A DNA stretch of 64,000 nucleotides, from the IMG/VR virus record IMGVR_UViG_3300045051_000720, positions 1 through 64,000 of that record. One strand, given 5' to 3'. Of this stretch, positions 13,163-62,658 are shown one piece after another; within the stretch, counting starts at the first letter, position 1, and the number at the start of each line of letters is the position of its first letter. The notes under the pieces are model-generated. The model worked only from the letters and a program-made list of their open reading frames with translations. It had not been told where the DNA came from and searched no databases. The position numbers were made by a program, and so were the translations under genes.

Positions 13163-13170
13163 CTATACAC
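13163..13170 (-). promoter_or_regulatory. putative late promoter GTGTATAG
   Basis: recurrent motif, 20 nt upstream of ATG 13142. Confidence 0.65.
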
Positions 13171-13233
13171 TTGGCAGGCCCCATCTGAGTACACTTCCCT
13201 TTCCCCCGTTGGTCAGAGGCGCGAGACGGTAGG

Positions 13234-13241
13234 TTATACAC
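13234..13241 (-). promoter_or_regulatory. putative late promoter GTGTATAA (tandem copy)
   Basis: recurrent motif in intergenic DNA. Confidence 0.5.
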
Positions 13242-13275
13242 GATCGTTGTGTGCTCCCCCACGCTCGCAAACACG

Positions 13276-13300
13276 AAAAAAGCGGCCCTTTTGAGGCCGC
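13276..13300 (-). terminator. rho-independent terminator
   Basis: GCGGCC/GGCCGC stem followed by U6 on minus strand. Confidence 0.65.
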
Positions 13301-13318
13301 CCGTGGGGTGCGAGATGG

Positions 13319-13735
13319 TTACTTGGTTGCCTTATCCACCTGTTCGGGGTCGATGCCGAAGACATCAATGATCTCCCCGAACACCGGGTTCGGCCCCAGC
13401 CCCTTCGCCTTAATCAGCTCCCCGATGAAGTGGAGGAAGGCCTTCTTGACCACGGCAGCTTGCTTCTCGGTTAGGGTCAGTTCGACGGGTTTCTCGCCCC
13501 ACGCCTTGTCAAAGGCCTGATAGGTCTTCAATTCATCTGCGCTCATAGCCTTCGCCTCAGCATCGGTCTTGACCCACGCCAGATCCAACGCGGGCAGGTA
13601 TTTCTCAACCATCTTGCCGCCGACATAGGCCTCGCCGAGGGTCTCGGCCCAGCCTTTGGCGTTGATGAGCTGTTTGAGGACGTTCAGGCACTGCTGCGTG
13701 ACGGTATAGGTGGTGGTAGGAGTCTCGGTAGCCAT
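13319..13735 (-). CDS. hypothetical protein
   Basis: MATETPTTT start lies just downstream of a consensus promoter. Confidence 0.7.
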   Translation of the reverse strand: MATETPTTTYTVTQQCLNVLKQLINAKGWAETLGEAYVGGKMVEKYLPALDLAWVKTDAEAKAMSADELKTYQAFDKAWGEKPVELTLTEKQAAVVKKAFLHFIGELIKAKGLGPNPVFGEIIDVFGIDPEQVDKATK

Positions 13736-13745
13736 ATGGTACCTC

Positions 13746-13774
13746 ATCATAGCCGCGCGCGAGGGTGTTGTCAA
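13746..13774 (-). promoter_or_regulatory. sigma70 promoter TTGACA-17-TATGAT
   Basis: near-perfect consensus. Confidence 0.75.
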
Positions 13775-13805
13775 CAATCGACCTCCATAATCCACCGCGC
13801 GCTGG

Positions 13806-13813
13806 GTGTATAA
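13806..13813 (+). promoter_or_regulatory. putative late promoter GTGTATAA
   Basis: recurrent motif, 26 nt upstream of ATG 13840. Confidence 0.65.
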
Positions 13814-13839
13814 CCAGCCCCGGGTGTGCCCCGGTCTCT

Positions 13840-14859
13840 ATGTGGCGACCCTTCTTGATTCTCACCCTCCTGCTTGCGACCGGATGCAGTCATTTTGACT
13901 ATACCGTGGCCCGGCGCTCGGCCATCGACAAGGAAATCGCGGAGGCGCGCGCCGAGACGACCAATCAGCTCAAGATCCTCAACGACCGCGAGTTGGGCCT
14001 GCTCAAAGACACCATCAAGCAGCTTCAGGCGCGCCAACAGGCGGCGTCGGACTACCTGTTCAAGGCGACCGTCACGTTCTCGACCCTCAAGACCCCCACC
14101 CGCCCCGAGATGGTGATGGGGCAGAGTGTCAATCAGACCGCCACCCAACTTCCCCCCGCCACGGCTGAGGCACAGGCCGCGACCTTGAAGGCCCTTCAGA
14201 CTGAACTGGACGAGACCAAGGTGTCCACCGAAGCCTTGCGCGCCCAATATGAAACCGAGCTGGGCAAAGCGCGCGCCGAGGGGGCGGCCAAAGCACAGGC
14301 CCTCAGCGATCTCGGGACGAAGCTGGCGGACGTGGACAAGGACCGCGTCAAGGCCCTCGAAGCGGCGCGCACCAAAGAGGCGGACCTCCAAGCCGCCAAG
14401 GACAAGGTACAGGACGCCGCGCTAGCGGCCAAGACCAAGGAGGCGGAGAACGCCAAGCACAACGAGCATGTCAAGATGTGGCTGATAGGCATTTTACTCA
14501 CTGCCGCTGCTGCCTGTGGCATAGGAGCAGCGTTCGTGCCTATTCCCACCCTCAAAACCAAGCTCATCATCGGCGCGGCGTTGTGTGGCGGGGCCGCGAT
14601 AGCGATTCCGTTCATAGAATGGTGGATGGTGATGGTCGCGATTGGGGGATGTCTTCTACTGGTCGCCGGGTGGGTAATCGTCGATTATCGACGCGAGCAT
14701 GGTGATGCTACAGACACTTATCGCGCCCTCAACGAGGTCAGGCAGAAGGCGACGGCTGAGTTCAAGGCGGTCGTGGCCCCCATCCTTGAGCAATGGCACA
14801 CCAACCCCGATACGAGCAAACGCATTGACGAGAGGCTCAAGCAGGTTGGGGACACCTAA
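13840..14859 (+). CDS. lipoprotein with long coiled coil and three C-terminal TM segments (unimolecular spanin candidate)
   Basis: MWRPFLILTLLLATG-C lipobox; Ala/Lys/Glu heptad region; three hydrophobic segments near C-terminus. Confidence 0.6.
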   Translation: MWRPFLILTLLLATGCSHFDYTVARRSAIDKEIAEARAETTNQLKILNDRELGLLKDTIKQLQARQQAASDYLFKATVTFSTLKTPTRPEMVMGQSVNQTATQLPPATAEAQAATLKALQTELDETKVSTEALRAQYETELGKARAEGAAKAQALSDLGTKLADVDKDRVKALEAARTKEADLQAAKDKVQDAALAAKTKEAENAKHNEHVKMWLIGILLTAAAACGIGAAFVPIPTLKTKLIIGAALCGGAAIAIPFIEWWMVMVAIGGCLLLVAGWVIVDYRREHGDATDTYRALNEVRQKATAEFKAVVAPILEQWHTNPDTSKRIDERLKQVGDT

Positions 14860-14869: not shown

Positions 14870-14898
14870 TTGACAATGCCCCCGCCACTGGCTAAGAT
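14870..14898 (+). promoter_or_regulatory. sigma70 promoter TTGACA-17-TAAGAT
   Basis: near-perfect consensus upstream of the sigma/terminase operon. Confidence 0.75.
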
Positions 14899-14920: not shown

Positions 14921-15442
14921 ATGCCCACCTACTACTGCCCGTTCGACCGCTGTGGGGCGGCGATTCAGTACACCATCACGAAACCCACCACCTGCCCGCG
15001 CTGCGAGCGGCGATTTGCGGATGCGTTCAAGGTGGCTGTGGCTCAAACACCCCCGCCGCCCGCGCCTGTTGTCGAGGAAGACGATGAACCGCGCCTTACT
15101 CGCTCGGCACTGGAAGCGCGGCGTAAGTCGCTCTCTACAACCTCCGTCAAGCCCCGCACTCGGCGCGAGCGTGATGATACCGCGGCCAATGTGATGACGC
15201 CAGTGGGGAGCAAAGCCCATCCTGCGCTGCCCGATCCCGAGCCCGAATCCGATATAGAGGACGATACCTACGACCCACGCGAGGCGCGGCGGCTGGCGCG
15301 TGAACTGGCGGCGTCCATCGACCCATCTACGATCGTCGTCGAGGACCAAGACGACGGCATCGTCCGATTCAGCCAGTTCGTCGAAGAAGCCAAGCGCAAT
15401 GGGGGCAAAGCCCCCAGCACCAAGACCAAGCGCCGCCGCTGA
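14921..15442 (+). CDS. zinc-ribbon protein with disordered charged C-terminus
   Basis: CPFDRC...CPRC motif. Confidence 0.7.
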   Translation: MPTYYCPFDRCGAAIQYTITKPTTCPRCERRFADAFKVAVAQTPPPPAPVVEEDDEPRLTRSALEARRKSLSTTSVKPRTRRERDDTAANVMTPVGSKAHPALPDPEPESDIEDDTYDPREARRLARELAASIDPSTIVVEDQDDGIVRFSQFVEEAKRNGGKAPSTKTKRRR

Positions 15443-16179
15443 TGGATGCCACTACGGAGGGCACCGCAAAGCCCGCCTTCGAGCACGCCTATCCCGAGAT
15501 CAAGCGTATCGTAGAGACCCGTCGTGGCTCGTGGACCTATACGAGTCTGATGGAGTGGACTGACGTATCGGCCATTATCGTAGAGCGGGCATGGCGCAAG
15601 TGGGATACCTTCGAGCCCGCGAAGGGGCCGCTAGAGAATTGGCTCAATCGTTTGATTAGCCACGCGCTTATCAATCTACGCCGCGACCTACTCCTTAGGT
15701 GGAGTCGTCCGTGCATAGGTGGTTGGAACGCAAGGGGGAAGACGTGCTTTCACAACCTCGGCGGCGAGACGTGCGCTATCACCAAATCGCATAAACAATG
15801 TGCTGAATGCCCCATCTATGCTGATTGGCAAAAGGCGCGCGAACATCAGCTTCACATCAAATCCACCGTCGCCCTCGAACACCACGCGCAGGAGGCGCAC
15901 AACATCCAAGGAGACTTCACTGACGCCGCCGAGATCAAGGACAAACTCGACGCCGCGATGAAGGAGGAGCTAACCCCGGGCGAGTGGCGCGTCTGGTATT
16001 GTCTTTACGTCAAACACATGAAGCCGAGCGAGGCCAGCACACACCTCGAAGCCCTTGTCAAGACATGGAAGCGCCTGCCGCGACCTGATGAGATCTATGG
16101 CTATCAATCCATCCTTCAGACCTCGCGCCGCCTTAAGGAGATCGCGATGGAGTGGCTGCGCCGGGAGGACCATATATGA
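15442..16179 (+). CDS. phage sigma70-family (ECF-like) sigma factor with Cys-rich insert
   Basis: region-2-like WRKWDTFEPAKGPLENWLNRLISHALINLRR; region-4-like LTPGEWRVWYCLY; five-Cys insert between them. Confidence 0.7.
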   Translation: MDATTEGTAKPAFEHAYPEIKRIVETRRGSWTYTSLMEWTDVSAIIVERAWRKWDTFEPAKGPLENWLNRLISHALINLRRDLLLRWSRPCIGGWNARGKTCFHNLGGETCAITKSHKQCAECPIYADWQKAREHQLHIKSTVALEHHAQEAHNIQGDFTDAAEIKDKLDAAMKEELTPGEWRVWYCLYVKHMKPSEASTHLEALVKTWKRLPRPDEIYGYQSILQTSRRLKEIAMEWLRREDHI

Positions 16180-17458: not shown

Positions 17459-18429
17459 TCAAGTGTCTGATCGATGATTCGGAGCACCCCTCCTATGCCG
17501 CTCTCCACACCTATGTGTGGAGGACGTATCACATGGGCAAGGAGTCGTATTATCGCACCTATCTCCCGCGCCACGATCTGCTTACGGGACAACCCATTCC
17601 CTTCAAGGATGCCGAGCAGTATCTGGGCGCTGACTTCGCCAACCGCGTCAACCTGAAGAAATGGCTTGCCACTCAGCCGCGCGAGGTGGGGTTGGCGTGG
17701 GCCAAGGAGTGGTTGGCCAAGCGCAAGGTCTCCAAGGGTCTGATCTATGCCCCGTCGCAGGCCGAGTTGCGCACCCTATGCACGCCCACGATGCCCTATT
17801 ACGAGGCAGTGGCCGCGGACGAGGGGGGCTACTATGGAATCACCACCGCAATGGGATTCAAGCTGCGCTATGTAAAGGGTCTGGTGGGTCAGACGCTACC
17901 CGCCGGAGTGTCGGTCATACAAGACACTCGCGAGCAGGCTCCTGTCAAGCTGGACCTTCCAACCCGTATCGATACCCTAGATGTAGGCGACTATGCTCTT
18001 GCATCGCCACATGACCAAGGCGTCCGCATCGAGCGCAAGTCTCTCGGTGATTTTTGTGGCACGCTCAGCGCGCGCAAACAGGTGCGCGAAGGTAAGACCA
18101 AGACGACCGAGTGGACAGCCTACGAACGCTTTGACCGTGAACTCACGCGCGCCAGTGAGGCAGGTCTCTACGTTGTCATGATGGTCGAGGCCAATATCAA
18201 TGACGCCCAACGATTCGACTACCTTCCTCAGACCAAATGGGTGAAGGCCACGCCCGCGCACATCCTGCACAACCTGCGCACGCTGTTGACCAAGTATCCC
18301 CTCTCGTTTCAGGTCGTGTTCTGCGATGGGCGAAAGGAGCTGGCAGACAAGATGACGCGCGTGCTGGCGTTGGGCGCGGCGGTGAGGTCGTACGACCTTC
18401 AGTACCACCATGAGGAGGGTCTCCTGTGA
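17455..18429 (+). CDS. ERCC4/XPF-family nuclease
   Basis: QDTREQ, LDVGDY, IERKSLGDF motifs. Confidence 0.85.
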   Translation: MIKCLIDDSEHPSYAALHTYVWRTYHMGKESYYRTYLPRHDLLTGQPIPFKDAEQYLGADFANRVNLKKWLATQPREVGLAWAKEWLAKRKVSKGLIYAPSQAELRTLCTPTMPYYEAVAADEGGYYGITTAMGFKLRYVKGLVGQTLPAGVSVIQDTREQAPVKLDLPTRIDTLDVGDYALASPHDQGVRIERKSLGDFCGTLSARKQVREGKTKTTEWTAYERFDRELTRASEAGLYVVMMVEANINDAQRFDYLPQTKWVKATPAHILHNLRTLLTKYPLSFQVVFCDGRKELADKMTRVLALGAAVRSYDLQYHHEEGLL

Positions 18430-20405
18430 GCTGGAAGGGCAACGGAAACAACCCCCCGCCCGACCCGATCACGGACTGGAACGCCGAGTTCGAGTGCCTG
18501 CTTGACTACAACGAGCTGCCCGAGGACATGGCGCGCAAGACCCTTGGGCGCTTCCTGATGACCAATATCGGGATGCTAGTCGAGATCCTCACACGCAAGA
18601 TGCTGGAGCCTTACCAGCGCATCGTGCTGAAGGGTTGGCTGAACAAAAATTTCTCACTCACCATCGCGGGCCGTGCGTGGGGTAAGAGCACCGTTGCGTC
18701 GCATTTCTGCTATCTCTATTGCCTGCTCAACCCGGGCCACCATATCTTGATCTGCGCCGCGACCTTCAGGTCCAGCCGTCAGATTGTTGAACGCATCGAT
18801 GAATGGGCCAACGCCGCGGGTGGTGAGTTATTGCGTGAGACGCTCAAAGCAACCCCGACCGGTGGTACCATCATCAAGAAGCAGGACCTGTATCGCATCT
18901 GGTTCAAGAACGGTTCATCGGTCACAGCAGTACCTCTGGGCGATCCCGACAATCTGCGCGGCTTTCGGTGCAACGTACTGATGATCGACGAAGGCCTGCT
19001 CATCCCACAGCACACCATCAACATGGTGCTCAAGCCGTTCCTCGCAGGCGGCGCCGACGCGACCAAAAAGCAACGCATCCGCCGCCGCGAGGCGCGCCTC
19101 ATCGAGATGGGCAAGATGCAGGCCAAGGACAAGGTCAAGTTCAAGGCCGACAGCAAGATGATCATCATCTCGTCCGCCTCCTACCAGTGGGAGGAGCTAT
19201 ACAAAGACATCTACAAACCCTACCGCGCCATCATCGAGGCAACGGATGTCGAGCGTCCGCGCGCCGAGGAGAACGAGAAGGGGGCATCCAGTTACCTCGT
19301 CCATCAGCTCTCCTACAAGATGGTCAACCCCGACCTGATGGACACCAGCATCCTTGAGGAAATCCGCGAGAAGCGCATCCCCGAGAGCGTCATCAAGCGC
19401 GAATACGAGGCACAGTTTGTCAACGAGTCGGGAGGCTTCTTCAGCGCGCGCCAGATGGCAGATTGCACTATCCCACTTGGCCAGCGGCCTTGTATCGAAA
19501 TCGTGGGCGAGCGTAACGCCGAATACATCCTCGCCGTCGACCCGGCGGGTGGCAGCATCGGTAACGATGCGGCGGGTGACCATTTCGCGATGTGTGTCAT
19601 CAAGATCATCCAGCGCGCCAAGGATGGCAAGAAGATCGGGTTAGTGGTACACCAATACGCGTGCGCGGGCAAGGACATGAAGCACCACCTAGCTTACATG
19701 TACTACCTGCTCAAGCGGTTCAACGTGGTCTATGTCGTGATGGACTCAACCGGTGGCGAGAACATGAGCTTTTTGACGATGTGCAACGAAAGCGAGTACT
19801 TCAAATCGCGCAAGATGGAGTTGAAGGCTATCGAGGCGGACTTCGCCAAGGAAGGGTTTGACGACACCGTCGCCGCGGTGCGCCGCTCGTACAACGCCGA
19901 CAGCAGTTTGCGGCGCATCGTGCATAACCAGTATTTCTCCTCCAGCATCATCAAGGCCGGTAACGACCACCTACGCGCCTGTTTTGAGCAGAAGACCATC
20001 ATGTTCGCGTCCAAGGCAGCGTCAGTGGACGGCGCAGTGGCTCAGATGTGCCAATGTGATATACTCGACATTCACAAGACCCATCCCGAATACTATGATC
20101 CTGAGTTGGAGGGCAGCGCCTCCATGCACGAGTTCGTCATCTATCAGGATGCCATGATGGACCTCGTCAAGACCGAGTGTGCGCTGATCGAGGTGAAGGC
20201 GAGCCCGCTGGGGCATCTGACCTATGATTTGCCCCAGCACATGACGCGTAACCGGAAGGATGAGAGGCGCTCCAGAAAGGACTCATATTCAGCACTTTGG
20301 CTAGGTGTCTGGGGCCTTAAGATATATCTTGCTATGTTGGAGATGCCCCCGCCCGAGGATGACACCTTCGTCCCTGTAGCTATCCCGATGCCGGGGGTGG
20401 GATAA
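18426..20405 (+). CDS. terL: terminase large subunit
   Basis: Walker A AGRAWGKST, RGFRCN + Walker B LMIDEG, RNaseH-like ILAVDP and C-terminal KDSYSAL. Confidence 0.92.
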   Translation: MSWKGNGNNPPPDPITDWNAEFECLLDYNELPEDMARKTLGRFLMTNIGMLVEILTRKMLEPYQRIVLKGWLNKNFSLTIAGRAWGKSTVASHFCYLYCLLNPGHHILICAATFRSSRQIVERIDEWANAAGGELLRETLKATPTGGTIIKKQDLYRIWFKNGSSVTAVPLGDPDNLRGFRCNVLMIDEGLLIPQHTINMVLKPFLAGGADATKKQRIRRREARLIEMGKMQAKDKVKFKADSKMIIISSASYQWEELYKDIYKPYRAIIEATDVERPRAEENEKGASSYLVHQLSYKMVNPDLMDTSILEEIREKRIPESVIKREYEAQFVNESGGFFSARQMADCTIPLGQRPCIEIVGERNAEYILAVDPAGGSIGNDAAGDHFAMCVIKIIQRAKDGKKIGLVVHQYACAGKDMKHHLAYMYYLLKRFNVVYVVMDSTGGENMSFLTMCNESEYFKSRKMELKAIEADFAKEGFDDTVAAVRRSYNADSSLRRIVHNQYFSSSIIKAGNDHLRACFEQKTIMFASKAASVDGAVAQMCQCDILDIHKTHPEYYDPELEGSASMHEFVIYQDAMMDLVKTECALIEVKASPLGHLTYDLPQHMTRNRKDERRSRKDSYSALWLGVWGLKIYLAMLEMPPPEDDTFVPVAIPMPGVG

Positions 20406-20420
20406 TTGGAGCGAGATTGG

Positions 20421-20428
20421 GTGTATAA
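20421..20428 (+). promoter_or_regulatory. putative late promoter GTGTATAA
   Basis: recurrent motif between terL and HNH/portal. Confidence 0.6.
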
Positions 20429-23238: not shown

Positions 23239-23246
23239 GTGTATAG
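23239..23246 (+). promoter_or_regulatory. putative late promoter GTGTATAG
   Basis: 9 nt upstream of ATG 23256. Confidence 0.7.
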
Positions 23247-23255: not shown

Positions 23256-25775
23256 ATGGCCCCAACGCCCCGCCACAAGGCCCGCTTCGTAGCGACGGCC
23301 CATCTATACACGCCGCCTGCGAGTGAGCAGATGGAGGCCTGTGCGTCGCTGGACAAGCTGCGCGCGCTGTTGCCTTCGGACATCGATCCTTCTACGCGTC
23401 CCACCCTGCTGTTCGCTGCGGGCAATCTGGCAGTGGCAAATTTGGCCAACCTTAACGACGACGCCGTCACGCTCGAAGACACCTTGCGCACCTATCGCCA
23501 GTTCGAGTGGCAGCTAGTGGATGTGGAGCACAACCGTGGCACAGTCGTCGGGTTCATCGTCAAGGCCGGGCTGAGCGAGTTCGGCACCGATCGTCTGATC
23601 ACCGAGGACGAGGCCCGCGCCGCGGGCAAGCCAGTGAATGTCGCCATTGTTATTGCGCTATGGCGCGTAGTGGACCCCGAGCTGGCGAGCTGGCTGGAGC
23701 GCGCCGACGCTCCCGGCAGCCCCGACAAGGGTAAGCTCAGCCTTTCGTTCGAGGTCGGGTTTGACGACTACGACGTAGTCTTGCTGCCCAAAGACGCATC
23801 CAACTTAGCCCTCGCCACCGCGCGCATCACACCCGACTCGCCCGAGTTCGAGCACTACAGCAAGATGCTGCGCTGCTACGGTGGCAAAGGTGTGTACAAG
23901 GACCAGCGGGTCGCGCGCATCATCATGGGTAATATAGTACCGCTCGGCGCGGGCATCGTGACGGTTCCAGCGGCGGACGTGAAGGGTTTGACGACCATCA
24001 CGGAGAGCCCCCATGCAGCGGACCCAGCCGCGGCGGCGGTAGTGAATGTGAACGCCGAAACTGATGCGGGCCTGTATAAATACAGCTCCACCCAATGCAC
24101 CCTCGCCGAGGCTGACGCCGCGCCGTTCAAGGCGTTTGCAGCATCTATTCCTGACGAGCACGTGCATACAGACGAGAAGGACTCGACGTTGGGACGGGAG
24201 ATGTCCACGCACTGCACCGTCCTCTACGGTATCAAAACCGCCGATGCCGAGGCCATCAAAACCATCCTCGCGGGATTCGGCCCCATCAAGATGACGCTGG
24301 GCAAGGTGTCCATGTTCGAGCGGGACGCCTACGATGTGCTCAAAGTGGACGTGGACAGCCCCGACCTGCACCGCGCGCACGCGCTCATCAAGACGGCCAC
24401 GGAGACCGAGACCAAGTGGCCGACCTATTCGCCGCACGCAACGATTGCCTATATGCGCAAGGGTCACGCGCGCGGCTACGTAGGCGACAGCCGCTTTGAG
24501 GGGATGTCGTTCACGTTCAACAGCGTCACGTTTTCTCCTCACACTGGCGACCGTGTCGAGATCCCTCTTGTACAAACCACCACCGCGGCGGTGTATATAG
24601 ACAACGACATGGCCACCCCCTCCCGTTTGATCAAGCTCCCCCAAGGCTGGCAGGAGCGTCTCAATTCCATTGCCAACTGGTCCGCCTCACCAGAGGGCGT
24701 GGTCACCGCTGCGAGTCTTCCGCATGGCGTGACGATTACCCTCTCCGATGGCCGCAAGATCGTTGCTAAAGTCGTTGATGGTCAGACACTTGAGGCAGCG
24801 ACGGAGGTCTCGATGGCCGGAGTGGTCATCACCGACATGACGCCGGGTGTGGGTCCGCAAGCCGACGATCCTGCTAACGAGCATCCCGCCAAGGCCAATG
24901 TCTATCCCACCAAGACGCCCGAGAAGGTTGCCGCAGAACAGGCCGAGCTGGAGAAGCAGCGCGCGGGTCAACAGGCGGGGTATAGCGGAGCCTCGGTTGC
25001 CCAAGTCACTAGCCTTCTTCAGTCGGTCGCTGTTAGCACCGCAGATCTCGCTGATGCTGTCTCTCGCATAAACACTGCCTCCGCAAGTGTATCATCCATC
25101 ACGACCCCATCTTCCCCCATGAACCTCTCTGATCTCAAGCAATCCCTCGCCAGCGTCAAGACTATCGAAGAGCTGCCCACCGTCGTTGCCAACGTTGGCC
25201 TGTTCGCCGACGAGATTGCCAAGGCCAGCGAGAAAATCGCCGCCGAGCGCAAGGCTGCCGTTGAAGCACAAGCCGCCGCCGAGAAGACCCTCGCCGAGGT
25301 CAAGGCCCAGCTCGACCAGATCTCCAAGGCTCACAATGACATGGTCGCCGCACAACAGGCCGCCGCCGCTGAGGCTGCGTTCCAAGCGCGCATGACCGCC
25401 GTGGCCGATACGTTCGACCTTGACGACGAAGTGCGCGCCGATGTGACCGAAGAGGTCAAGGCGTGTGCTGACGATGCTGCGTTCGCCAAGTGGATGACCA
25501 AGGCGAAGAAGACGATGAAGGGCTGGCTCAAGGCCGCGAAGCCGGCGAAAAAGGACGATGACGGCGACGATGATGACGCGCAGGCCAAGGCCGCCGCGAA
25601 AACGGCCCTTGCTTCCGCCAAAGCCAACATCGTCGATCCCAACATTCCGAATACGCTTGAGGTCAACGCCAAGACGCTGCGTGAGCAGTACGCGGAGACC
25701 TTCGCCAAGGGTATCCGCATCGGCGGCGAGAGTGTCGCTGACATCACCGCGCGTGCCAAGCCCGCGAAGAAATAA
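23256..25775 (+). CDS. prohead protease - 2H phosphoesterase - scaffold polyprotein
   Basis: HK97/herpes-type protease motifs (VEH, SLSFEV, GAGIVTVPA); HCT and HAT 2H motifs; acidic Ala-rich coiled-coil C-terminus; located between portal and MCP. Confidence 0.8.
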   Translation: MAPTPRHKARFVATAHLYTPPASEQMEACASLDKLRALLPSDIDPSTRPTLLFAAGNLAVANLANLNDDAVTLEDTLRTYRQFEWQLVDVEHNRGTVVGFIVKAGLSEFGTDRLITEDEARAAGKPVNVAIVIALWRVVDPELASWLERADAPGSPDKGKLSLSFEVGFDDYDVVLLPKDASNLALATARITPDSPEFEHYSKMLRCYGGKGVYKDQRVARIIMGNIVPLGAGIVTVPAADVKGLTTITESPHAADPAAAAVVNVNAETDAGLYKYSSTQCTLAEADAAPFKAFAASIPDEHVHTDEKDSTLGREMSTHCTVLYGIKTADAEAIKTILAGFGPIKMTLGKVSMFERDAYDVLKVDVDSPDLHRAHALIKTATETETKWPTYSPHATIAYMRKGHARGYVGDSRFEGMSFTFNSVTFSPHTGDRVEIPLVQTTTAAVYIDNDMATPSRLIKLPQGWQERLNSIANWSASPEGVVTAASLPHGVTITLSDGRKIVAKVVDGQTLEAATEVSMAGVVITDMTPGVGPQADDPANEHPAKANVYPTKTPEKVAAEQAELEKQRAGQQAGYSGASVAQVTSLLQSVAVSTADLADAVSRINTASASVSSITTPSSPMNLSDLKQSLASVKTIEELPTVVANVGLFADEIAKASEKIAAERKAAVEAQAAAEKTLAEVKAQLDQISKAHNDMVAAQQAAAAEAAFQARMTAVADTFDLDDEVRADVTEEVKACADDAAFAKWMTKAKKTMKGWLKAAKPAKKDDDGDDDDAQAKAAAKTALASAKANIVDPNIPNTLEVNAKTLREQYAETFAKGIRIGGESVADITARAKPAKK
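24591..24598 (+). promoter_or_regulatory. internal late-promoter motif GTGTATAT before in-frame ATG 24609
   Basis: GC-rich upstream flank and spacing match the intergenic copies. Confidence 0.45.
25119..25775 (+). CDS. putative nested in-frame scaffold protein (MNLSDLKQ...)
   Basis: GTGTATC at 25087, C-rich leader TCTTCCCCC-ATG, in frame with the protease; coiled-coil domain starts here. Confidence 0.5.
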   Translation: MNLSDLKQSLASVKTIEELPTVVANVGLFADEIAKASEKIAAERKAAVEAQAAAEKTLAEVKAQLDQISKAHNDMVAAQQAAAAEAAFQARMTAVADTFDLDDEVRADVTEEVKACADDAAFAKWMTKAKKTMKGWLKAAKPAKKDDDGDDDDAQAKAAAKTALASAKANIVDPNIPNTLEVNAKTLREQYAETFAKGIRIGGESVADITARAKPAKK

Positions 25776-25803
25776 CTCACGCATATAAATCGCGCTACAC
25801 TGA

Positions 25804-25811
25804 GTGTATAG
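25804..25811 (+). promoter_or_regulatory. putative late promoter GTGTATAG
   Basis: upstream of decoration/MCP genes. Confidence 0.7.
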
Positions 25812-25845
25812 ACCTTCAACCCCCCTCTTACCATAGGACCACCCC

Positions 25846-26445: not shown

Positions 26446-26492
26446 TCCCTTCCTCTCCCATCAACCCCTATTAGGCACCCCCTATCCTCTCC

Positions 26493-27748: not shown

Positions 27749-28726
27749 ATGATAACCACCCCATGGACCTCTCAAGAAGACGCTATCCTGCGTGAACGCT
27801 TTGCTTCGTGTTCTAGCATCGAAGAAGTGGTGCCTTATTTACCCGGACGCACCTATAACGCGATACGCACACGCGCTAACGCATATCTTGGTGTCAAAAT
27901 AAAAAAACTTCCCGTCCACGATACCCACTGTTTTGACGTGCCCGATGAGATCAACTGTTCGTGGGCGGGTTATCTGGCAGCAGACGGATGTGTATCTGAC
28001 AAAGGCCGCTTAACGTTAGGTATTGCGAGTAAAGACCGTGCTCATATTGAAGCGTTAGTACTGTATATGGGATTCACAGGGCGGATTTGGGACTATACCA
28101 AATCCTATACCGACCTCAAGGTGAAAAAATACGGCAAGGTCAGTACCTACTCGGGTACTTGCCATATCTCCACCCTTCAAATCCAATGTCCAGCCGTCTG
28201 TGTACAACTAGCTAGACACTGGAACATCACGCCTCGCAAAACGCGCACTCTGCAACCTCCTAATCTGACTGATGACCGCCTTATCATGGCTTACCTCTCG
28301 GGTTTTATTGACGGCGATGGATGGATTATCGAGGACAAAAGCACAAAGCACCCCCAGTACAGCATTGCCGTCATGGGTACTAAGGAGATGATGGAATGGA
28401 CCAAGGCTGTATTTGATCGTCTGACGCCTTACCTTATCACTGCTAAGCTACAGCCCACTGAATCGGACAACATATACGATTACAAGGTCAGCGGGGTCAA
28501 GGCTTTCTGGTTGGCTAAATTATTTTTGACGCTGGATATTCCTCGTCTTGACCGGAAATGGGACAAAATGCGACGATTGATTGCGGAGGTAGAGGCAGGC
28601 ACTCCGTCCCAACGTTTTTTAACCACTATGGTAAATGGTCGCCCTAGCGATACCATCCTTACGCAGTTCGGACTCCTTGATTACGCAAATGCCTTATGCA
28701 CAACGGTTAGACCAAGTGTAGCATAA
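27749..28726 (+). mobile_element. free-standing double-motif LAGLIDADG homing endonuclease
   Basis: WAGYLAADGC and YLSGFIDGDG motifs; AT-richer than flanks. Confidence 0.85.
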
Positions 28727-28741
28727 TCTCCCCCCCCTCGG

Positions 28742-28780
28742 GTGTATGGTATCCTGCTTACCTTACCCCATTGGGTAAGG
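28742..28780 (+). promoter_or_regulatory. late-promoter variant GTGTATGG plus perfect 8-bp hairpin CCTTACCC-CATT-GGGTAAGG
   Basis: direct reading of the intergenic sequence. Confidence 0.45.
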
Positions 28781-28800
28781 AACGGTCCAAGGCCCCTTTT

Positions 28801-29326: not shown

Positions 29327-29334
29327 GTGTATAA
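29327..29334 (+). promoter_or_regulatory. putative late promoter GTGTATAA
   Basis: 9 nt upstream of ATG 29344. Confidence 0.7.
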
Positions 29335-38586: not shown

Positions 38587-38594
38587 CTATACAC
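38587..38594 (-). promoter_or_regulatory. putative late promoter GTGTATAG
   Basis: recurrent motif upstream of GIY-YIG/L-K-I-J. Confidence 0.65.
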
Positions 38595-44330: not shown

Positions 44331-44338
44331 CTATACAC
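44331..44338 (-). promoter_or_regulatory. putative late promoter GTGTATAG
   Basis: upstream of TMP. Confidence 0.7.
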
Positions 44339-47340: not shown

Positions 47341-47348
47341 CTATACAC
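47341..47348 (-). promoter_or_regulatory. putative late promoter GTGTATAG
   Basis: recurrent motif. Confidence 0.65.
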
Positions 47349-47363
47349 TTACGGCGGGTGGGA

Positions 47364-48488
47364 TTATGCGGCGTAGGTTTTGCCTACGGTCCCAGCTGCG
47401 TGTGCAGAGGCGACTTCCTCGGGAGAGACAGCGACCCAATCAGGGTGATCCATTGTGGATGAAAGGATACGCGCAAGGCTATCACTACCCAACCCTACCA
47501 TCTCCTCAAAACGTCGCTTACCTTCGACCTCACATATCATCCCATCGGAGCGGCGTTTGATGTAGAAGACCGTTCCGGTACCTTTACGAGGACGCGCCAT
47601 AGCTTGTCTTCGGCGATCTTCGCGTTCGCGCTGAACGCGCGTTTCGTACTGCTCTATCAATCGGATGAGGTCCTGCCATTTAACCCACTTGCGTTCCATG
47701 CGAAAGGTACACCCCGAGTAGAGGTAGGCCATAACCTTCAAGATCTGTTGGTTGCCTAGTATCTTGAGGGTGTAATTGTTGTTCGCCCGCGTCTTGTGGC
47801 GTTTGACCAAGCGGTAGGTAATCCCACACACTCGTTTGAGGACTTCTCCATATCCCTCGCACAATTCGTGCGTACTAGTGATGGAGAACTCAGCGTTTCC
47901 AACAATACGGTCGTGGTCGGTACTGGGTTGAGCAATGTATAGACAACCATCACCCTCAAAATAGCCGAGGAGAAAGGAAGAAAGGTATTCGGGCGGGACC
48001 TGAGTAGAGGTAGGAAACTGGAGCGTGAACGTTTTGCGAGGAGTACAACCCAATGCGATGAGATCGGTGGCGAGTTGCTGACTAGTCATACGCAAAGTAC
48101 ATACGTCTTGCGCCGCCGCGGTGTTCCTATCTCGATAGGTGAAAGGATTAGTGCAACCCATTCGTTGGCGCAATATCTCCAAATAGTCCTTGTCTTGTTT
48201 TGCGAGAGATATCGTAGTGGTATGTTGACCGGCGTGACTGATATGCACGCAACCGTCTGCATATAAAAAGCCAAGAAGCTGCGCCTTATCATGAGAGTCA
48301 ATCCGCGCGAAATATGTTTCATCAAGCATGTACTGGCGTCGCGCCTCGGACGTAGATCTAGTCACTCCTGCCGACTTCAGTAGAGCAAACATACGATTGC
48401 GTGGTATTCCCGTCAGGCGAGCTAATACCTCCCCGTTCATATGGCGATGGACATAGAGGTCAATGATATCGGAGGTGCTGTATGACAT
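47364..48488 (-). mobile_element. free-standing double-motif LAGLIDADG homing endonuclease
   Basis: LLGFLYADGC and FLLGYFEGDGC motifs; ATG 48488 follows own promoter. Confidence 0.85.
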
Positions 48489-48495
48489 AGGGAGT

Positions 48496-49770: not shown

Positions 49771-49778
49771 CTATACAC
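49771..49778 (-). promoter_or_regulatory. putative late promoter GTGTATAG
   Basis: recurrent motif. Confidence 0.7.
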
Positions 49779-50822: not shown

Positions 50823-50830
50823 CTATACAC
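50823..50830 (-). promoter_or_regulatory. putative late promoter GTGTATAG
   Basis: 18 nt upstream of ATG 50804. Confidence 0.7.
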
Positions 50831-51718: not shown

Positions 51719-51726
51719 CTATACAC
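51719..51726 (-). promoter_or_regulatory. putative late promoter GTGTATAG
   Basis: 9 nt upstream of GTG 51709. Confidence 0.7.
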
Positions 51727-52877: not shown

Positions 52878-52885
52878 CTATACAC
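52878..52885 (-). promoter_or_regulatory. putative late promoter GTGTATAG
   Basis: 12 nt upstream of ATG 52865. Confidence 0.7.
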
Positions 52886-60572: not shown

Positions 60573-60601
60573 ATCATAGTCGGGTTGACTAGGCTTGTCA
60601 A
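60573..60601 (-). promoter_or_regulatory. sigma70 promoter TTGACA-17-TATGAT
   Basis: near-perfect consensus upstream of SSB-like gene. Confidence 0.75.
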
Positions 60602-60804
60602 CTCCTTTTCCTATAGAGCAGTCAGACTACTTGAGGCAGCACCAAGCAGAACACGCTGCCGTTGAGGTACACAAATGGTACCTCAGCGAGCGCGCTGGTC
60701 GGGACGTAGGGTGGGAATACGCCAACTGGAGCTGGGTTATGCACGGCCACCGTTCGCGTTGGCGTCGTGTTTACCAACAGAGTGGCAGCCAAACCCACGC
60801 CTGA
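60595..60804 (+). CDS. DUF4032-like small protein
   Basis: AE...HKWYLSERAGRDVGWEYA..W...HRSRWR pattern. Confidence 0.6.
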   Translation: MSTPFPIEQSDYLRQHQAEHAAVEVHKWYLSERAGRDVGWEYANWSWVMHGHRSRWRRVYQQSGSQTHA

Positions 60805-60861
60805 GTATCGCTGACCAGATAAGCAACCCGCACGTAGCTCGCACGGAGGATGGCGCGTAGC

Positions 60862-61272
60862 TTAGTCATCATTGCCCCAATCCACTTTTATTCCCTTTGC
60901 GGCGAGTGTCTTCACGCTTTCCTCGCGCTGCTGCTCGGGGTGCTTTTTACCATGGCGGCGTTTGGAATAGCGGTCGAAATAGGCTTGTCGCACGGGGTCG
61001 GTGCCATCCTTATCCTGCCGCTTGAGCGATAGCTCCTTGGCGCGATCCCAAAGGTCCCCAACGCACCCGCCCTTGCCCGTCGCCTTGACGAAATCCTTGG
61101 CCGAATAAGGGTCGACCTTCGTATCGACCATCGCGCGCGGCTTGGTCCATTCGCGCTTCCACTGACCTTTCTGGTCACCCTTAGGCCCGGCGTAGACCTT
61201 GTCGTCGTTCATATGAAACACGACTTCGTGTACCTCGCCGGTCTTGACGTGGGAGAATAGATAGATGGGCAT
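60862..61272 (-). CDS. FmdB-like regulatory protein lacking Cys ligands
   Basis: MPIYLF...TGEVHEV start. Confidence 0.55.
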   Translation of the reverse strand: MPIYLFSHVKTGEVHEVVFHMNDDKVYAGPKGDQKGQWKREWTKPRAMVDTKVDPYSAKDFVKATGKGGCVGDLWDRAKELSLKRQDKDGTDPVRQAYFDRYSKRRHGKKHPEQQREESVKTLAAKGIKVDWGNDD

Positions 61273-61469
61273 CAGAAAAGCAGAACCTCACCCTTGCTCG
61301 TGGCGATGGACACGAGGCTTTGACCCTTCGCCTTGGACCACATGCGCTCCGCCAACACCCGCCGTTTGGTCGGCGTGGGGTAGTTTGACCTCACTGCCGG
61401 GTCGCGATCCAACCGCACGAGATACGCAGCCTTGTGTTCACTATCGCGCGGCGTGGGGTAAGACGACAT
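61272..61469 (-). CDS. hypothetical protein
   Basis: 65 aa downstream of consensus promoter. Confidence 0.55.
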   Translation of the reverse strand: MSSYPTPRDSEHKAAYLVRLDRDPAVRSNYPTPTKRRVLAERMWSKAKGQSLVSIATSKGEVLLF

Positions 61470-61476
61470 CTAATCT

Positions 61477-61505
61477 ATGGTAGCCTCAGCGCGGGCTGGT
61501 GTCAA
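61477..61505 (-). promoter_or_regulatory. sigma70 promoter TTGACA-17-TACCAT
   Basis: 17-nt spacing, 7 nt before ATG 61469. Confidence 0.65.
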
Positions 61506-61999
61506 CAAGCCATAGGGGGTTGGTCGTTGACCTTGGGAGCCGGAGCGGCGTCGCCGCCCTTGTTGGGCCGCTTGGTGTCCTTCTCGACCTTTCTGAACGA
61601 CAGAGGCCATTTGGCGAGGCCAGTCTGAGGGTCCGTCACCACCTCTATCTCGCCCATCATCCATGGCATCTCGTCGAGCGGGGGTTTCTTCCCATTGTCC
61701 ATCGAATCGGGGTTGGGCGACGAGGCGGGGCCTCCCTTGTCAGGATTCGGGAGAGGCGGGTCACCCGCCTGCTTCTCGCGCTTCTTGATGTCGCTATCGA
61801 TGGGTTCTTTGACGATAGCATACTCGTCATCACCCGCGCGCACGATATAGGCGGCCTTGGCTTTGTGATCACGCCAAGTGGACATGCAGATAGCAACGGC
61901 CTGACCCTCGTGGTCCTTATACTCGTCGTAGATGGTCGAAACACATCTCGATACAAAGGCCTTCTTCGACTCGTCCTTACGCGGTGATGGAATAGGCAT
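61502..61999 (-). CDS. hypothetical protein (MPIP.P...E....FVSRC N-terminal phage motif)
   Basis: small N-terminal two-Cys helical motif, Pro-rich tail. Confidence 0.6.
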   Translation of the reverse strand: MPIPSPRKDESKKAFVSRCVSTIYDEYKDHEGQAVAICMSTWRDHKAKAAYIVRAGDDEYAIVKEPIDSDIKKREKQAGDPPLPNPDKGGPASSPNPDSMDNGKKPPLDEMPWMMGEIEVVTDPQTGLAKWPLSFRKVEKDTKRPNKGGDAAPAPKVNDQPPMAC

Positions 62000-62059
62000 A
62001 TAAAAAGCCCCCGCTCGGCGCGGGCCAAGAGGGGGCGAAGGAGTTAGGTTGGGTCAACC

Positions 62060-62626
62060 TTAGATCGCACCAAACGCATGGTCGGTCGAGTACCAACGCG
62101 CGCCATAGGCGAGGAAGTTGAATGTCATGCCGCCCGTGAGGGTCGACGCGACAGACACACCTACCGAAGACGCCGCCGTCGCGCCTGCGTTAACAATCAG
62201 GTCAGCCGCGTTGGCACAGCGGATGGTCGCCGTACCAGTCGTGGCCGTCTTGATCGTAACCGTCTTGCCCTGCATGTTGGCGGTCGGAGGAAGCGTGTAG
62301 ATGACCGGCGCGAACCCGGACAGCAGCACGAAGTTTTCCGCGATGCCAGTGAAGTTGCTCGTCAGCGGGCCGACGCCGCTGAAGGAGGGCAGCGCGGCAA
62401 TCCAGCGGCCCGTTGTGGGCGTAGAGAGGACGTTGATGTTATCTACCGTCGCAGTCGACGATGCCGAGAAGTAGTAAAGGTTGGCGCCACCGTCGTTGGG
62501 GGTGTTCGTTCCAAGGGTGCGAACCACAGCGTTCTCACCAAGGGTTGCAACACTGATGGCGGCTAGGGCGGCATTGGTGGCAACCGCGCCATTGGGGAGA
62601 GCAGAGATGGGGACGATAGTAGCCAT
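62060..62626 (-). CDS. virion accessory protein with tailspike N-terminal-type domain
   Basis: VRTLG...NDGGANLYYF...D...TGRW; late motif upstream. Confidence 0.55.
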   Translation of the reverse strand: MATIVPISALPNGAVATNAALAAISVATLGENAVVRTLGTNTPNDGGANLYYFSASSTATVDNINVLSTPTTGRWIAALPSFSGVGPLTSNFTGIAENFVLLSGFAPVIYTLPPTANMQGKTVTIKTATTGTATIRCANAADLIVNAGATAASSVGVSVASTLTGGMTFNFLAYGARWYSTDHAFGAI

Positions 62627-62650
62627 GGAAGTAAGAGGGGTTGTCCATCG

Positions 62651-62658
62651 CTATACAC
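62651..62658 (-). promoter_or_regulatory. putative late promoter GTGTATAG
   Basis: 24 nt upstream of ATG 62626. Confidence 0.7.

What the first reader, a model, noticed from the sequence alone, without database searches (positions are those of the whole stretch)
13163..62658. GTGTATA(G/A) late-promoter regulon
Seen: R-R-GTGTATA-R occurs on the coding strand within ~60 nt of a start at 13163, 13806, 20421, 23239, 25804, 29327, 38587, 44331, 47341, 49771, 50823, 51719, 52878 and 62651 (plus a tandem copy at 13234 and an internal one at 24591), often with a GC-rich 5' flank and no -35 box; three copies inside genes on the antisense strand look incidental. Non-structural genes instead have TTGACA-17-TANNAT promoters. 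Known: T4 gp55 reads a single-element late promoter. Inference: a phage-specific single-element late promoter class, different from T4 TATAAATA; several copies are only 9-12 nt from the start codon, implying near-leaderless mRNAs.
Basis: partly seen in the sequence, partly recalled or inferred. Interest (0 to 1): 0.7.

Follow-up and report, generated by a model that had tools for sequence, protein, structure and literature searches.

The report
Phage late-promoter motif GTGTATA regulon
An uncultured 219-kb soil phage marks its head, tail and homing-endonuclease genes with a conserved GTGTATA signal that is most likely a promoter read by one of the phage's own sigma factors; this is a known strategy with a new sequence and several unusual details.

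Summary
GTGTATA occurs 20 times in the window against 2.65 expected. It is the most non-coding-enriched 7-mer of the whole 219,464-bp phage genome: 31 of 39 copies lie in the 15.7% that is non-coding. Sixteen window copies point at a start codon 1-59 nt downstream; four antisense copies fit chance. In eight loci from related uncultured phages it is again the top non-coding 7-mer (52 copies; 43 sense and within 110 nt of a called start). It sits at orthologous positions while the flanks diverge.

ORF 15442-16179 is a two-domain ECF-like sigma factor. It has its own conserved host-type promoter and a GTGTATA copy heads its operon. The genome shows no RNA polymerase genes.

Best reading: a phage-specific late promoter class read by host core polymerase plus this sigma.

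- About a fifth of copies carry a -35-like (C)ATAAAC element exactly 13 bp upstream, so the class is not purely single-element.
- A second phage sigma (genome 64951-65622) is an untested rival reader.
- Leaderless mRNAs are also the rule at the early TTGACA-N17-TAnnnT promoters.

The closest analogue is phiEco32 gp36 (tAATGTATAtA), with no detectable sigma homology. No transcript data exist, so function and timing are inferred.

The parts
13164..13170 (-). GTGTATA copy 21 nt upstream of the 78-aa ORF 12906-13142. The 588-aa tail-fibre-like ORF 11116-12882 follows.
   Evidence: Orthologous copies precede the 78-80-aa gene in L014, L016, L017 and L019.
13235..13241 (-). Tandem upstream copy with poor flanks (TC before the motif). 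Possibly a remnant of the bidirectional palindromic copy GTGTATACAC seen in relatives.
13787..13812 (+). Bipartite copy ATAATC-N13-GTGTATA, 27 nt upstream of ORF 13840-14859, the first gene of the block that contains the sigma gene. Candidate autoregulatory promoter.
   Evidence: L016 has the motif 10 nt before the orthologous ATG.
14870..14898 (+). Host-type promoter TTGACA-N17-TAAGAT ahead of ORF 14921-15442 and the sigma gene. Conserved in all four relatives.
15442..16179 (+). Sigma-1, a 245-aa ECF-like sigma factor. It has a sigma2 domain (residues 8-89), an invariant Cys-rich linker and a sigma4 domain (residues 160-245). Its start overlaps the stop of the upstream 173-aa ORF.
   Evidence: Pfam Sigma70_r2 at 28.1 bits against a cut-off of 24. 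TIGR02937 E 7e-8, below its cut-off. Alignment. Model and fold matches.
20402..20427 (+). ATAATT-N13-GTGTATA directly after the terminase stop. It precedes the HNH/EndoVII homing endonuclease 20429-21217 and the putative portal gene 21199-23238 (assigned by position after the terminase; no family match).
   Evidence: The orthologous copy after the terminase is present in L014, L016 and L017, where no endonuclease intervenes in L016 and L017.
23239..23245 (+). Copy 10 nt upstream of the ATG of the 839-aa head-module ORF 23256-25775.
   Evidence: The 10-nt spacing is identical in L014, L016 and L017 although the intervening bases differ.
24591..24611 (+). Internal copy plus the in-frame ATG at 24609, 11 nt downstream. 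It would give a nested 388-aa C-terminal product.
   Evidence: Frame computed from coordinates: (24609-23256)/3 = 451. Conserved in L016, L014 and L017. In L014 a GIY-YIG endonuclease splits the gene at this point.
25785..25810 (+). ATAAAT-N13-GTGTATA, 35 nt upstream of the 199-aa gene 25846-26445. The probable major capsid gene 26493-27668 follows.
   Evidence: Alignment A3 shows that only the two elements and the region near the start codon are conserved.
28723..28748 (+). One-mismatch variant ATAATC-N13-GTGTATG upstream of ORF 28771-29313.
29327..29333 (+). Copy 10 nt upstream of ORF 29344-29862.
38588..38594 (-). Copy 38 nt upstream of the GIY-YIG homing endonuclease 37716-38549, inside the tail module.
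44332..44338 (-). Copy 38 nt upstream of the 1647-aa tape-measure gene 39350-44293.
   Evidence: Orthologous copies in L025, L026 and L027.
47342..47367 (-). ATAATC-N13-GTGTATA, 51 nt upstream of ORF 46961-47290 (tail chaperone position). In relatives it lies directly behind a terminator hairpin and T-run.
49772..49778 (-). Copy 59 nt upstream of the 383-aa ORF 48561-49712 (major tail protein position).
50824..50830 (-). Copy 19 nt upstream of the 318-aa ORF 49848-50804.
51720..51726 (-). Copy 10 nt upstream of the GTG start of the 289-aa ORF 50840-51709.
   Evidence: Full-length homologues support the long form. GTG at 10 nt also occurs in L027 and L028.
52879..52885 (-). Copy 13 nt upstream of the 155-aa ORF 52398-52865.
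   Evidence: In relatives the distance is 7-10 nt.
62652..62677 (-). ATAAAC-N13-GTGTATA, 25 nt upstream of the 188-aa ORF 62060-62626.
   Evidence: Both elements are conserved in L025 and L026.
23305..23311 (-). Antisense in-gene copy, judged incidental. The same applies to 30371-30377(-), 38964-38970(+) and 46338-46344(+).
   Evidence: Four copies against 2.65 expected by chance.

Best explanation
(R)(G)GTGTATA(G/T) is the core, -10-like element of a phage-specific promoter class.

Proposed mechanism:
- Host core RNA polymerase carries the phage's ECF-like sigma factor (ORF 15442-16179), which is first made from its own conserved host-type promoter at 14870.
- This holoenzyme binds and melts the TGTATA core and starts transcription about 7-10 nt downstream of the motif.
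- At sites that begin a transcription unit, the sigma4 domain additionally contacts a -35-like (C)ATAAAC element 13 bp upstream. Examples are the sites behind a terminator, ahead of the capsid operon and ahead of the sigma block.
- Most other sites work with the core alone.

Targets and consequences:
- The class drives the packaging, head and tail genes.
- It feeds back on the sigma block.
- Homing endonucleases and a TnpB gene have adopted it.
- Where the start codon lies 7-13 nt from the motif, the mRNA has a leader of roughly 0-6 nt.

Shown: the motif, its strand and position bias, its conservation at orthologous sites, the sigma fold, and the lack of polymerase genes.

For: Enrichment, strand and position bias.

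Conservation in relatives with diverged flanks:
- 52 copies in 140 kb; 42 lie in the 4.4% non-coding fraction and 43 are sense and within 110 nt of an independently called start.
- It is the top non-coding 7-mer there too.
- Orthologous sites.
- The motif persists next to a sigma homologue of only 38% identity.

The motif must itself be the promoter in several places:
- Single genes on the opposite strand at 90981, 121205, 128582 and 150812 have the motif 7-9 nt from the start. They have no TTGAC-N16-18-TAnnnT match upstream.
- In L026 and L027 the motif follows a terminator hairpin.
- The L027 tail module has no sigma70-like sites against 3.4 expected, but seven motif copies.

Lower bound of spacing:
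- Four copies in this genome have 7 nt between motif and start, two more are at 7 nt in relatives, and none is convincingly shorter.
- A second mode lies at 10 nt.
- For comparison, the sigma70-type promoters of this phage have the start codon 5-8 nt after the -10 hexamer in 21 of 39 cases.

Sigma-1 is a sigma factor:
- Pfam region 2 scores above its cut-off.
- Sigma2 and sigma4 domain fold matches have rmsd 1.9-2.3 A over whole domains, and all top hits are sigma factors.

ECF-like logic (features as described in PMC5758882):
- AAC in the -35-like element.
- A 14-bp spacer to TGTA.
- A motif copy ahead of the sigma's own gene block.

Analogy: phiEco32 gp36 reads tAATGTATAtA / AATGTA centred at -11.5 (PMC4281155, PMC12276001).

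No T7-type or beta/beta' polymerase domains are found in the genome.
Against: - There is no transcript 5'-end evidence. The phage is known only from metagenomes, and no RNA run holds it.
- Metatranscriptome contigs of relatives cover the capsid operon but do not define 5' ends. One contig runs 306 nt upstream of the start codon.
- A second, equally conserved sigma factor exists, and nothing computational ties sigma-1 rather than sigma-2 to the motif.
- Some copies (genome 69841, 214339) sit inside ordinary TTGACA-N17-TAnnnT promoters, so host sigma70 may read at least those.
- The motif also precedes a ribonucleotide reductase gene, which is not a typical late function.
- The 13-14-bp spacer is at the short end of the range for ECF promoters.
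- Sigma-1 scores below the curated TIGR02937 cut-off.
Confidence: 0.6

Rival explanations
1. The motif is a promoter, but it is read by a different factor. Candidates are the second phage sigma (genome 64951-65622, minus strand), or host sigma70 helped by a phage co-factor acting on a -10-only promoter.
For: - Sigma-2 is a real sigma fold, with region 2 up to 24% identical to primary sigmas.
- Sigma-2 is conserved in the clade and lies on the same 93.6-kb contig as L014.
- Two copies of the motif overlap canonical TTGACA-N17-TAnnnT promoters.
- TATA inside the motif resembles a -10 hexamer.
Against: - No motif copy precedes the sigma-2 operon, whereas one precedes the sigma-1 block in this genome and in L016.
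- The AAC / (C/T)GTA architecture is ECF-like, and sigma-1 is the ECF-like one (PMC5758882).
- At 7-nt spacing, a TAnnnT hexamer starting at the motif's last TA would leave only 3 nt before the start codon.
- Sigma-2 may instead serve the TTGACA or ACTAGACA classes.
Confidence: 0.2
2. The motif acts in RNA, not DNA. It would be a processing site or translation signal within long late transcripts that creates short-leader mRNAs.
For: - It is strand-specific, intercistronic and close to start codons.
- It has a high density inside co-oriented gene blocks.
- An RNA contig of a relative extends upstream of the capsid-operon start.
Against: - The distance to the start varies from 7 to 59 nt.
- It occurs ahead of lone opposite-strand genes and behind terminators, where no upstream transcript is expected.
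- It is coupled at a fixed distance to an upstream DNA element.
- No conserved sequence or structure lies around it.
Confidence: 0.07
3. The motif is the binding site of a phage DNA-binding regulator (activator or repressor) rather than the element contacted by sigma.
For: A short invariant 7-mer with little tolerance of mismatches is also typical of operator half-sites.
Against: - It is asymmetric and strictly oriented.
- In several genes there is no room for a separate -10 element between it and the start codon.
- No repeat or dyad partner is seen.
Confidence: 0.06
4. Chance, base composition, or remnants of a repeated mobile element.
For: Non-coding DNA is more A+T-rich than coding DNA in this genome.
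Against: - Shuffles and same-composition permutations exclude composition as the cause.
- The flanks carry no information beyond about 2 nt on either side.
- The motif is conserved at orthologous sites across genomes of 51-62% G+C.
Confidence: 0.01

Closest known systems
Escherichia phage phiEco32 middle/late promoters read by the phage ECF-like sigma gp36
   Same: - The phage-encoded small sigma is made from a host-type promoter.
- The promoter is defined mainly by a single -10-region element with the same TGTATA core: tAATGTATAtA, or AATGTA centred at -11.5 (PMC4281155, PMC12276001).
- The sigma C-terminal domain can contact the -35 region.
   Different: - There is no detectable sequence homology between sigma-1 and gp36 (hhalign probability 0.2%).
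- The upstream flank is GG rather than AA.
- A subset of sites has an AAC-type -35 element.
- Sigma-1 has a Cys-rich 70-residue linker.
- The host and phage lineage are unrelated, and there are no matches to any of 50,697 GenBank phage records.
- Whether a gp79-like co-factor exists is unknown.
T4 late promoters (TATAAATA at -10) read by gp55 with gp33 and the sliding clamp
   Same: - A single A+T-rich -10 element without an obligatory -35.
- Many promoters are scattered in front of individual late genes.
- Homing endonuclease genes also use the phage's regulated promoters (established T4 knowledge, from memory).
   Different: - The sequence is different.
- Sigma-1 has both sigma2 and sigma4 domains, whereas gp55 is a region-2-only protein.
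- An optional -35-like element is present.
- There is no evidence for clamp dependence.
Bacterial ECF sigma promoters, for example Bacillus subtilis sigmaW (TGAAAC ... CGTA)
   Same: - AAC in the -35 element.
- A (C/T)GTA-type -10.
- Spacer within the quoted 14-17 bp range.
- A motif copy ahead of the sigma's own gene block, as in autoregulation (PMC5758882).
   Different: - Only about a fifth of the sites have the -35 element. ECF promoters normally need both elements and keep close to consensus.
- The -10 core is longer (7 invariant bases).
- No anti-sigma partner has been identified.
- Sigma-1 falls below the TIGR02937 cut-off.
Bacillus phage SPO1 sigma cascade (gp28 for middle genes, gp33/gp34 for late genes)
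   Same: More than one phage sigma factor is present in one genome, and there are several promoter classes. The SPO1 cascade itself is recalled from memory and from the abstract of PMC13401047.
   Different: The assignment of the two sigmas to classes is unknown here. The promoter sequences are unrelated.

Membership tests
Sigma-70 family, group 4 (ECF-like): ORF 15442-16179 | Region 2 (sigma2) domain | tested here: met
   Pfam PF04542 scores 28.1 bits against a cut-off of 24. Fold matches to sigmaE, SigC and RpoE sigma2 domains give rmsd 2.0-2.3 A over 70-78 residues.
Sigma-70 family, group 4 (ECF-like): ORF 15442-16179 | Region 4 (sigma4) domain with helix-turn-helix | tested here: met
   There is no Pfam hit. 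The predicted C-terminal domain (residues 160-245, pLDDT 86-95) superposes on the SigD, SigR and SigL sigma4 domains with rmsd 1.9-2.6 A over whole domains, Z 7.8-7.9. This rests on a predicted model.
Sigma-70 family, group 4 (ECF-like): ORF 15442-16179 | Score above the curated family model cut-off (TIGR02937) | tested here: not met
   32.2 bits against a cut-off of 42.9, E 7e-8. It is a divergent member: 354 cluster representatives form its own family.
Sigma-70 family, group 4 (ECF-like): ORF 15442-16179 | Binds core RNA polymerase and directs initiation | not testable with these tools
ECF-type promoter | [quoted passage not shown] | tested here: inconclusive
   Present at a fixed offset in 13 of 77 sense sites under the strict pattern, with a few more shifted by 1-2 nt, against about 1 expected. 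Absent from the majority.
ECF-type promoter | The sigma's own operon carries the target promoter (autoregulation) | tested here: met
   Window 13787-13812 lies ahead of the gene block that contains the sigma gene. L016 has the motif 10 nt before the orthologous first gene. Whether transcription reads through to the sigma gene is inferred.
phiEco32 gp36-type system | Promoter core TGTATA in the -10 region | tested here: met
   GTGTATA compared with tAATGTATAtA (PMC4281155). The position relative to the transcription start is not known here.
phiEco32 gp36-type system | Sigma homologous to gp36 | tested here: not met
   hhalign of the sigma-1 alignment against gp36 gives probability 0.2% and E 0.32. 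tblastn of sigma-1 against 50,697 phage records finds nothing.
T4-type late promoter | TATAAATA element and a gp55-type region-2-only sigma | tested here: not met
   The motif differs, and sigma-1 has a sigma4 domain.
Promoter (generic) | Primary transcript 5' ends a few nt downstream | not testable with these tools
   No RNA run holds this phage. Contigs of relatives give no 5' ends.

The most novel reading that the evidence does not exclude
A large, so far uncultured family of soil and rhizosphere siphovirus-like phages of about 200 kb uses a private ECF-like sigma factor with an invariant five-cysteine (possibly zinc- or redox-sensing) linker. This sigma reads a 7-bp -10-only promoter with an optional AAC -35 element. 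It gives late mRNAs with almost no leader, a conserved internal promoter that makes a nested head protein, and a promoter 'currency' that homing endonucleases and TnpB have adopted. Together with a second phage sigma and three promoter classes, this would be a complete sigma cascade that arose independently of T4, SPO1 and phiEco32.
Probability: 0.35. Interest if true: 0.6.

Novelty: new member of a known kind. Interest (0 to 1): 0.45.

Why it matters
Phage-encoded sigma factors with private late promoters are a classic theme (T4, SPO1, phiEco32), but they are known from very few cultured phages.

This regulon can be read directly from metagenomic sequence. It is conserved across a clade that has no cultured relative. 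It also shares its TGTATA core with an unrelated coliphage system, which hints at a constraint on how small sigmas melt DNA.

In practice:
- The motif gives operon boundaries and corrected start codons for these genomes. Examples are the 289-aa form of 50840-51709 and the nested start at 24609.
- It flags which mobile genes ride on late transcription.
- It offers a compact orthogonal sigma/promoter pair for synthetic biology, if the pairing is confirmed.

Tried and rejected
- Nucleotide and protein searches of 50,697 GenBank phage records found only remote terminase matches of 23-25% identity. The sigma and capsid proteins found nothing.
- A literature search for the motif itself returned nothing relevant.
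- Eleven low-G+C IMG/VR relatives of the 289-aa protein (29-43% identity, 31-42% G+C) show no GTGTATA enrichment. They were uninformative.
- RNA evidence: no RNA run holds the phage. Laying four metatranscriptomes at 80% likeness showed a relative's capsid operon in a peat sample (1969-nt contig, depth 30) but no usable 5' ends. One contig extends 306 nt upstream of the start codon.
- phmmer and a profile search of sigma-1 against PDB sequences gave only a weak hit to RpoE region 2 (E 0.14).
- A crude 'ORF within 100 nt' control was useless, because random positions score 40-55% in this G+C-rich DNA. It was replaced by gene-call-based tests.
- The genome search could not reach the records behind the relatives' loci.
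- I considered a phage RNA polymerase promoter and rejected it. No T7-type, beta or beta' domains were found. The T7-type search had a silent control, and very divergent jumbo-phage polymerases could still be missed.
- I did not run the complex predictor, because I make no binding claim that it could settle.

Full report
CONTEXT

The window is the first 64 kb of a 219,464-bp IMG/VR virus record (59% G+C, CheckV 96% complete, linear). It was assembled from a rhizosphere metagenome.

Gene content is that of a large siphovirus-like phage.
- Plus strand: terminase 18426-20405; a probable portal 21199-23238, assigned by position only, with no family match; an 839-aa head-module protein; and a weak major-head match for 26493-27668.
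- Minus strand: lambda-type tail genes, with tail assembly and minor tail proteins at 35-39 kb and a 1647-aa tape measure at 39350-44293.
- Several homing endonucleases are interspersed among these genes.
- The terminase has only remote matches among 50,697 GenBank phage records. The sigma and capsid proteins have none.

THE OBSERVATION

GTGTATA occurs 20 times in the window against 2.65 +/- 1.71 in dinucleotide shuffles, and 39 times in the genome.
- With my own codon-usage gene calls (357 genes, 85% coding), 31 of the 39 copies lie in the 15.7% non-coding DNA. The binomial P is about 2e-18.
- An unbiased comparison of all 7-mers and 8-mers between non-coding and coding DNA puts GTGTATA first, with 31 against 8 copies, a 20-fold enrichment. 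Its one-base shifts come next.
- Among the 210 permutations of the same seven letters, the median non-coding count is 2.
- One-mismatch variants are at most 3-5-fold enriched, so the seven bases are tightly constrained.
- Sixteen window copies are sense to a start codon 1-59 nt downstream.
- Four copies are antisense inside genes, which is what chance predicts.
- Flank preferences over 77 sense sites from this and related genomes: G or A at -2 in 65, G or A at -1 in 73, and G, T or A after the motif in 43, 20 and 11.
- The 13 nt upstream are 70% G+C against 55% further upstream.

AN UPSTREAM ELEMENT

About a fifth of the sites carry (C)ATA(A/T)A(A/T)C ending exactly 13 nt before the motif.
- The strict pattern matches 13 of 77 sites at that one offset. 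It matches 0-1 at all other offsets except the ATATAA form, which is shifted by two.
- Window copies with the element are 13806, 20421, 25804, 47348 and 62658, plus the variant GTGTATG at 28742.
- The element hardly occurs in a consistent context on its own. It therefore depends on the core and is not a second promoter.
- Alignment of the capsid-operon region from three genomes shows that ATATAAA and GTGTATA are conserved while the 13-nt spacer varies.

COMPARATIVE EVIDENCE

I found relatives in two ways.
- Homologues of the sigma protein (16 clusters, 49-70% identity) led to contigs L014, L016, L017/L018 and L019.
- Homologues of the 289-aa tail-module protein led to L025-L028.

These eight loci total 140,272 bp, with 51-62% G+C and only 4.4% non-coding DNA by the collection's own gene calls.
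- GTGTATA occurs 52 times.
- 42 copies are non-coding, and 43 are sense and within 110 nt of a called start.
- It is again the top non-coding 7-mer: 40 non-coding against 10 coding copies, present in all eight loci.

The copies sit at orthologous positions:
- after the terminase stop;
- after the probable portal gene, with exactly 10 nt to the ATG in all four genomes although the ten bases differ;
- inside the 839-aa gene, just before an in-frame ATG (see below);
- ahead of the 199-aa plus capsid genes;
- ahead of the 78-aa, 155-aa, 289-aa, 318-aa, 383-aa and 109-aa genes, the tape-measure gene and the 188-aa gene.

In L026 and L027 the bipartite copy follows a terminator hairpin and T-run directly. 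The L027 tail module has seven motif copies and no sigma70-like site, where 3.4 are expected. A contig carrying a sigma homologue of only 38% identity still has two sense intergenic copies. Distant low-G+C relatives do not show the motif.

WHY A PROMOTER

- Outside the window the motif stands 7-9 nt before the start of single genes that lie on the strand opposite to their neighbours. These are a LAGLIDADG endonuclease at 90981, small genes at 121205 and 128582, and a TnpB gene at 150812. None has a TTGAC-N16-18-TAnnnT match upstream.
- At 7-nt spacing there is no room for a separate -10 element, so the motif itself must occupy the -10 region.
- The phage's own sigma70-type promoters calibrate the geometry. 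There are 39 non-coding matches to TTGACN-N16-18-TAnnnT, at 14 times the coding density. The -10 reads (C)TAnnnT. From memory, this resembles alphaproteobacterial promoters.
- In 21 of those 39 the start codon lies 5-8 nt after the hexamer, with a mode of 6. Leaderless mRNAs are therefore normal for this phage.
- For GTGTATA the smallest spacing is 7 nt. It occurs four times here and twice in relatives, and a second mode lies at 10 nt.
- If TGTATA occupies -12 to -7, as the phiEco32 element does (AATGTA centred at -11.5, PMC12276001), a 7-nt spacing puts the ATG at +2 and a 10-nt spacing at +5.

THE FACTOR

ORF 15442-16179 (sigma-1):
- It matches Pfam Sigma70_r2 above its cut-off. It matches TIGR02937 (ECF sigma) at E 7e-8, which is below that model's cut-off.
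- An AlphaFold model built from 16 homologues has mean pLDDT 76, with both domains mostly above 90.
- Every top structural hit is a sigma factor. Residues 8-89 superpose on sigma2 domains and residues 160-245 on sigma4 domains, with rmsd 1.9-2.3 A.
- The roughly 70-residue linker between the domains carries five invariant cysteines.
- The family has 354 cluster representatives in 1.8 billion proteins.

How it is expressed:
- Its gene is translationally coupled to a 173-aa ORF.
- The pair has a TTGACA-N17-TAnnnT promoter that is conserved in all four relatives.
- A GTGTATA copy heads the block. It lies 27 nt before the first gene here and 10 nt before it in L016.
- Host-driven synthesis followed by self-reinforcement, an AAC-type -35, a (C/T)GTA-type -10 and a 14-bp spacer all fit what is described for ECF sigmas (PMC5758882).

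Other polymerase components:
- The genome has no detectable T7-type, beta or beta' polymerase domains.
- It does encode a second sigma at 64951-65622 on the minus strand. Pfam hits to regions 2 and 4 are weak, but the fold is clearly that of a sigma factor: Z 10.8, sigma2 rmsd 2.8 A over 91 residues, sigma4 rmsd 1.8 A over 62 residues.
- The second sigma is conserved in the clade, and no GTGTATA precedes its operon.

COMPARISON WITH KNOWN SYSTEMS

- The nearest analogue is phiEco32. Its ECF-like sigma gp36 reads tAATGTATAtA at middle and late promoters (PMC4281155, PMC12276001). The TGTATA core is shared, but sigma-1 and gp36 show no detectable homology.
- T4 gp55 with TATAAATA shares the single-element logic but not the sequence or the sigma architecture.
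- The finding is a new member of a known kind of system. Its unusual details are a mixed core-only and bipartite architecture, very short leaders, an internal promoter, and use of the motif by selfish genes.

INTERNAL COPY

The copy at 24591 is followed 11 nt later by the ATG at 24609, which is in frame with the 839-aa ORF 23256-25775. The motif and start are conserved in L016, L017 and L014. In L014 a GIY-YIG endonuclease splits the gene at this point, so the C-terminal part is a separate gene. This suggests a nested 388-aa product, as in phage protease/scaffold gene pairs (an analogy from memory).

LIMITS

- There is no cultured host and no RNA data for this phage.
- Timing ('late') rests on the function of downstream genes.
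- My gene calls are home-made, but the relatives' statistics use independent calls.
- The structural conclusions rest on predicted models.

Noticed in passing
genome 64951-65622 (-), just outside the window (L020:951-1622): A second phage sigma factor of 223 aa. Its Pfam region 2 and region 4 hits are weak, but its fold is clearly that of a sigma factor and is closest to sigB, sigS and sigA. It is conserved in the clade and sits under a TTGACA-type promoter at 66892. Its target promoters are unknown.
   Followed up: partly
whole genome; in the window 13746(-), 14870(+), 59713(-), 60573(-), 61477(-): The early-type promoters TTGACA-N17-(C)TAnnnT have the start codon 5-8 nt after the -10 hexamer in 21 of 39 cases, so early mRNAs are mostly leaderless. 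The spacer often carries TC(N)AAC, which forms an inverted repeat with TTGAC and could be an operator.
   Followed up: partly
genome 187-202 kb (for example 192581, 194330, 195706, 197192, 199850, 201807): A third promoter-like class: TAGGGT-N5-CCC-ACTAGACA, about 13 nt, CTGCTATCCT, then about 6 nt to the ATG. It is repeated ahead of a series of small genes.
   Followed up: no
genome 70.5-75.6 kb (L020:6578-11572): An array of 14 tRNA genes, 13 of them on the minus strand. Upstream at 77644(-) lies ATATAAAC-N13-GTGTATA, with a TTGACG-N17-TATGAT promoter directly before it, so the array may be transcribed both early and late.
   Followed up: partly
window 20429-21217, 27740-28726, 37716-38549, 47364-48524; genome 90040-90981, 149571-150812, 216194-216901: Many selfish genes: EndoVII/HNH, two phrog_4645/HNH endonucleases, two GIY-YIG, one LAGLIDADG and one TnpB (IS605 OrfB). 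Five of them stand directly behind a GTGTATA copy. Relatives carry different endonucleases at other sites, also behind the motif.
   Followed up: partly
window 23256-25775 (+), residues 317-402: The 839-aa head-module protein carries a 2H phosphoesterase domain (2'-5' RNA ligase-like, E 4e-8; Acb1 anti-CBASS family, E 2e-5). This could be a packaged or late-made anti-defence enzyme.
   Followed up: no
window 15442-16179, residues 91-123: Five invariant cysteines (C91, C102, C111, C120, C123) lie in the low-confidence linker between the sigma2 and sigma4 domains of sigma-1. They could form a metal-binding or redox-sensitive insert, which is unusual for a sigma factor.
   Followed up: no
window 50840-51709 (-): The protein on record for this genome is 232 aa, but homologues of 290-294 aa align over the whole 289-aa form. 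That form starts at the GTG 10 nt after the motif. The motif helps to correct start codons.
   Followed up: yes
L014:6659-6668 and L016:8372-8381: In relatives the divergent region ahead of the sigma block holds a palindromic GTGTATACAC that presents the motif on both strands, a possible bidirectional promoter. The window instead has an extra early gene (13319-13735) inserted there.
   Followed up: no
window 25844-27381: A peat metatranscriptome (run X4) contains a 1969-nt contig at depth 30 that is about 80% identical to the 199-aa gene plus the capsid gene. Relatives of this phage are therefore transcriptionally active in nature.
   Followed up: partly
window 38964-38970 (+): One of the four antisense in-gene copies has the full GG...G flanks. 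It could be a genuine antisense promoter inside the minor tail gene 38601-39350.
   Followed up: no
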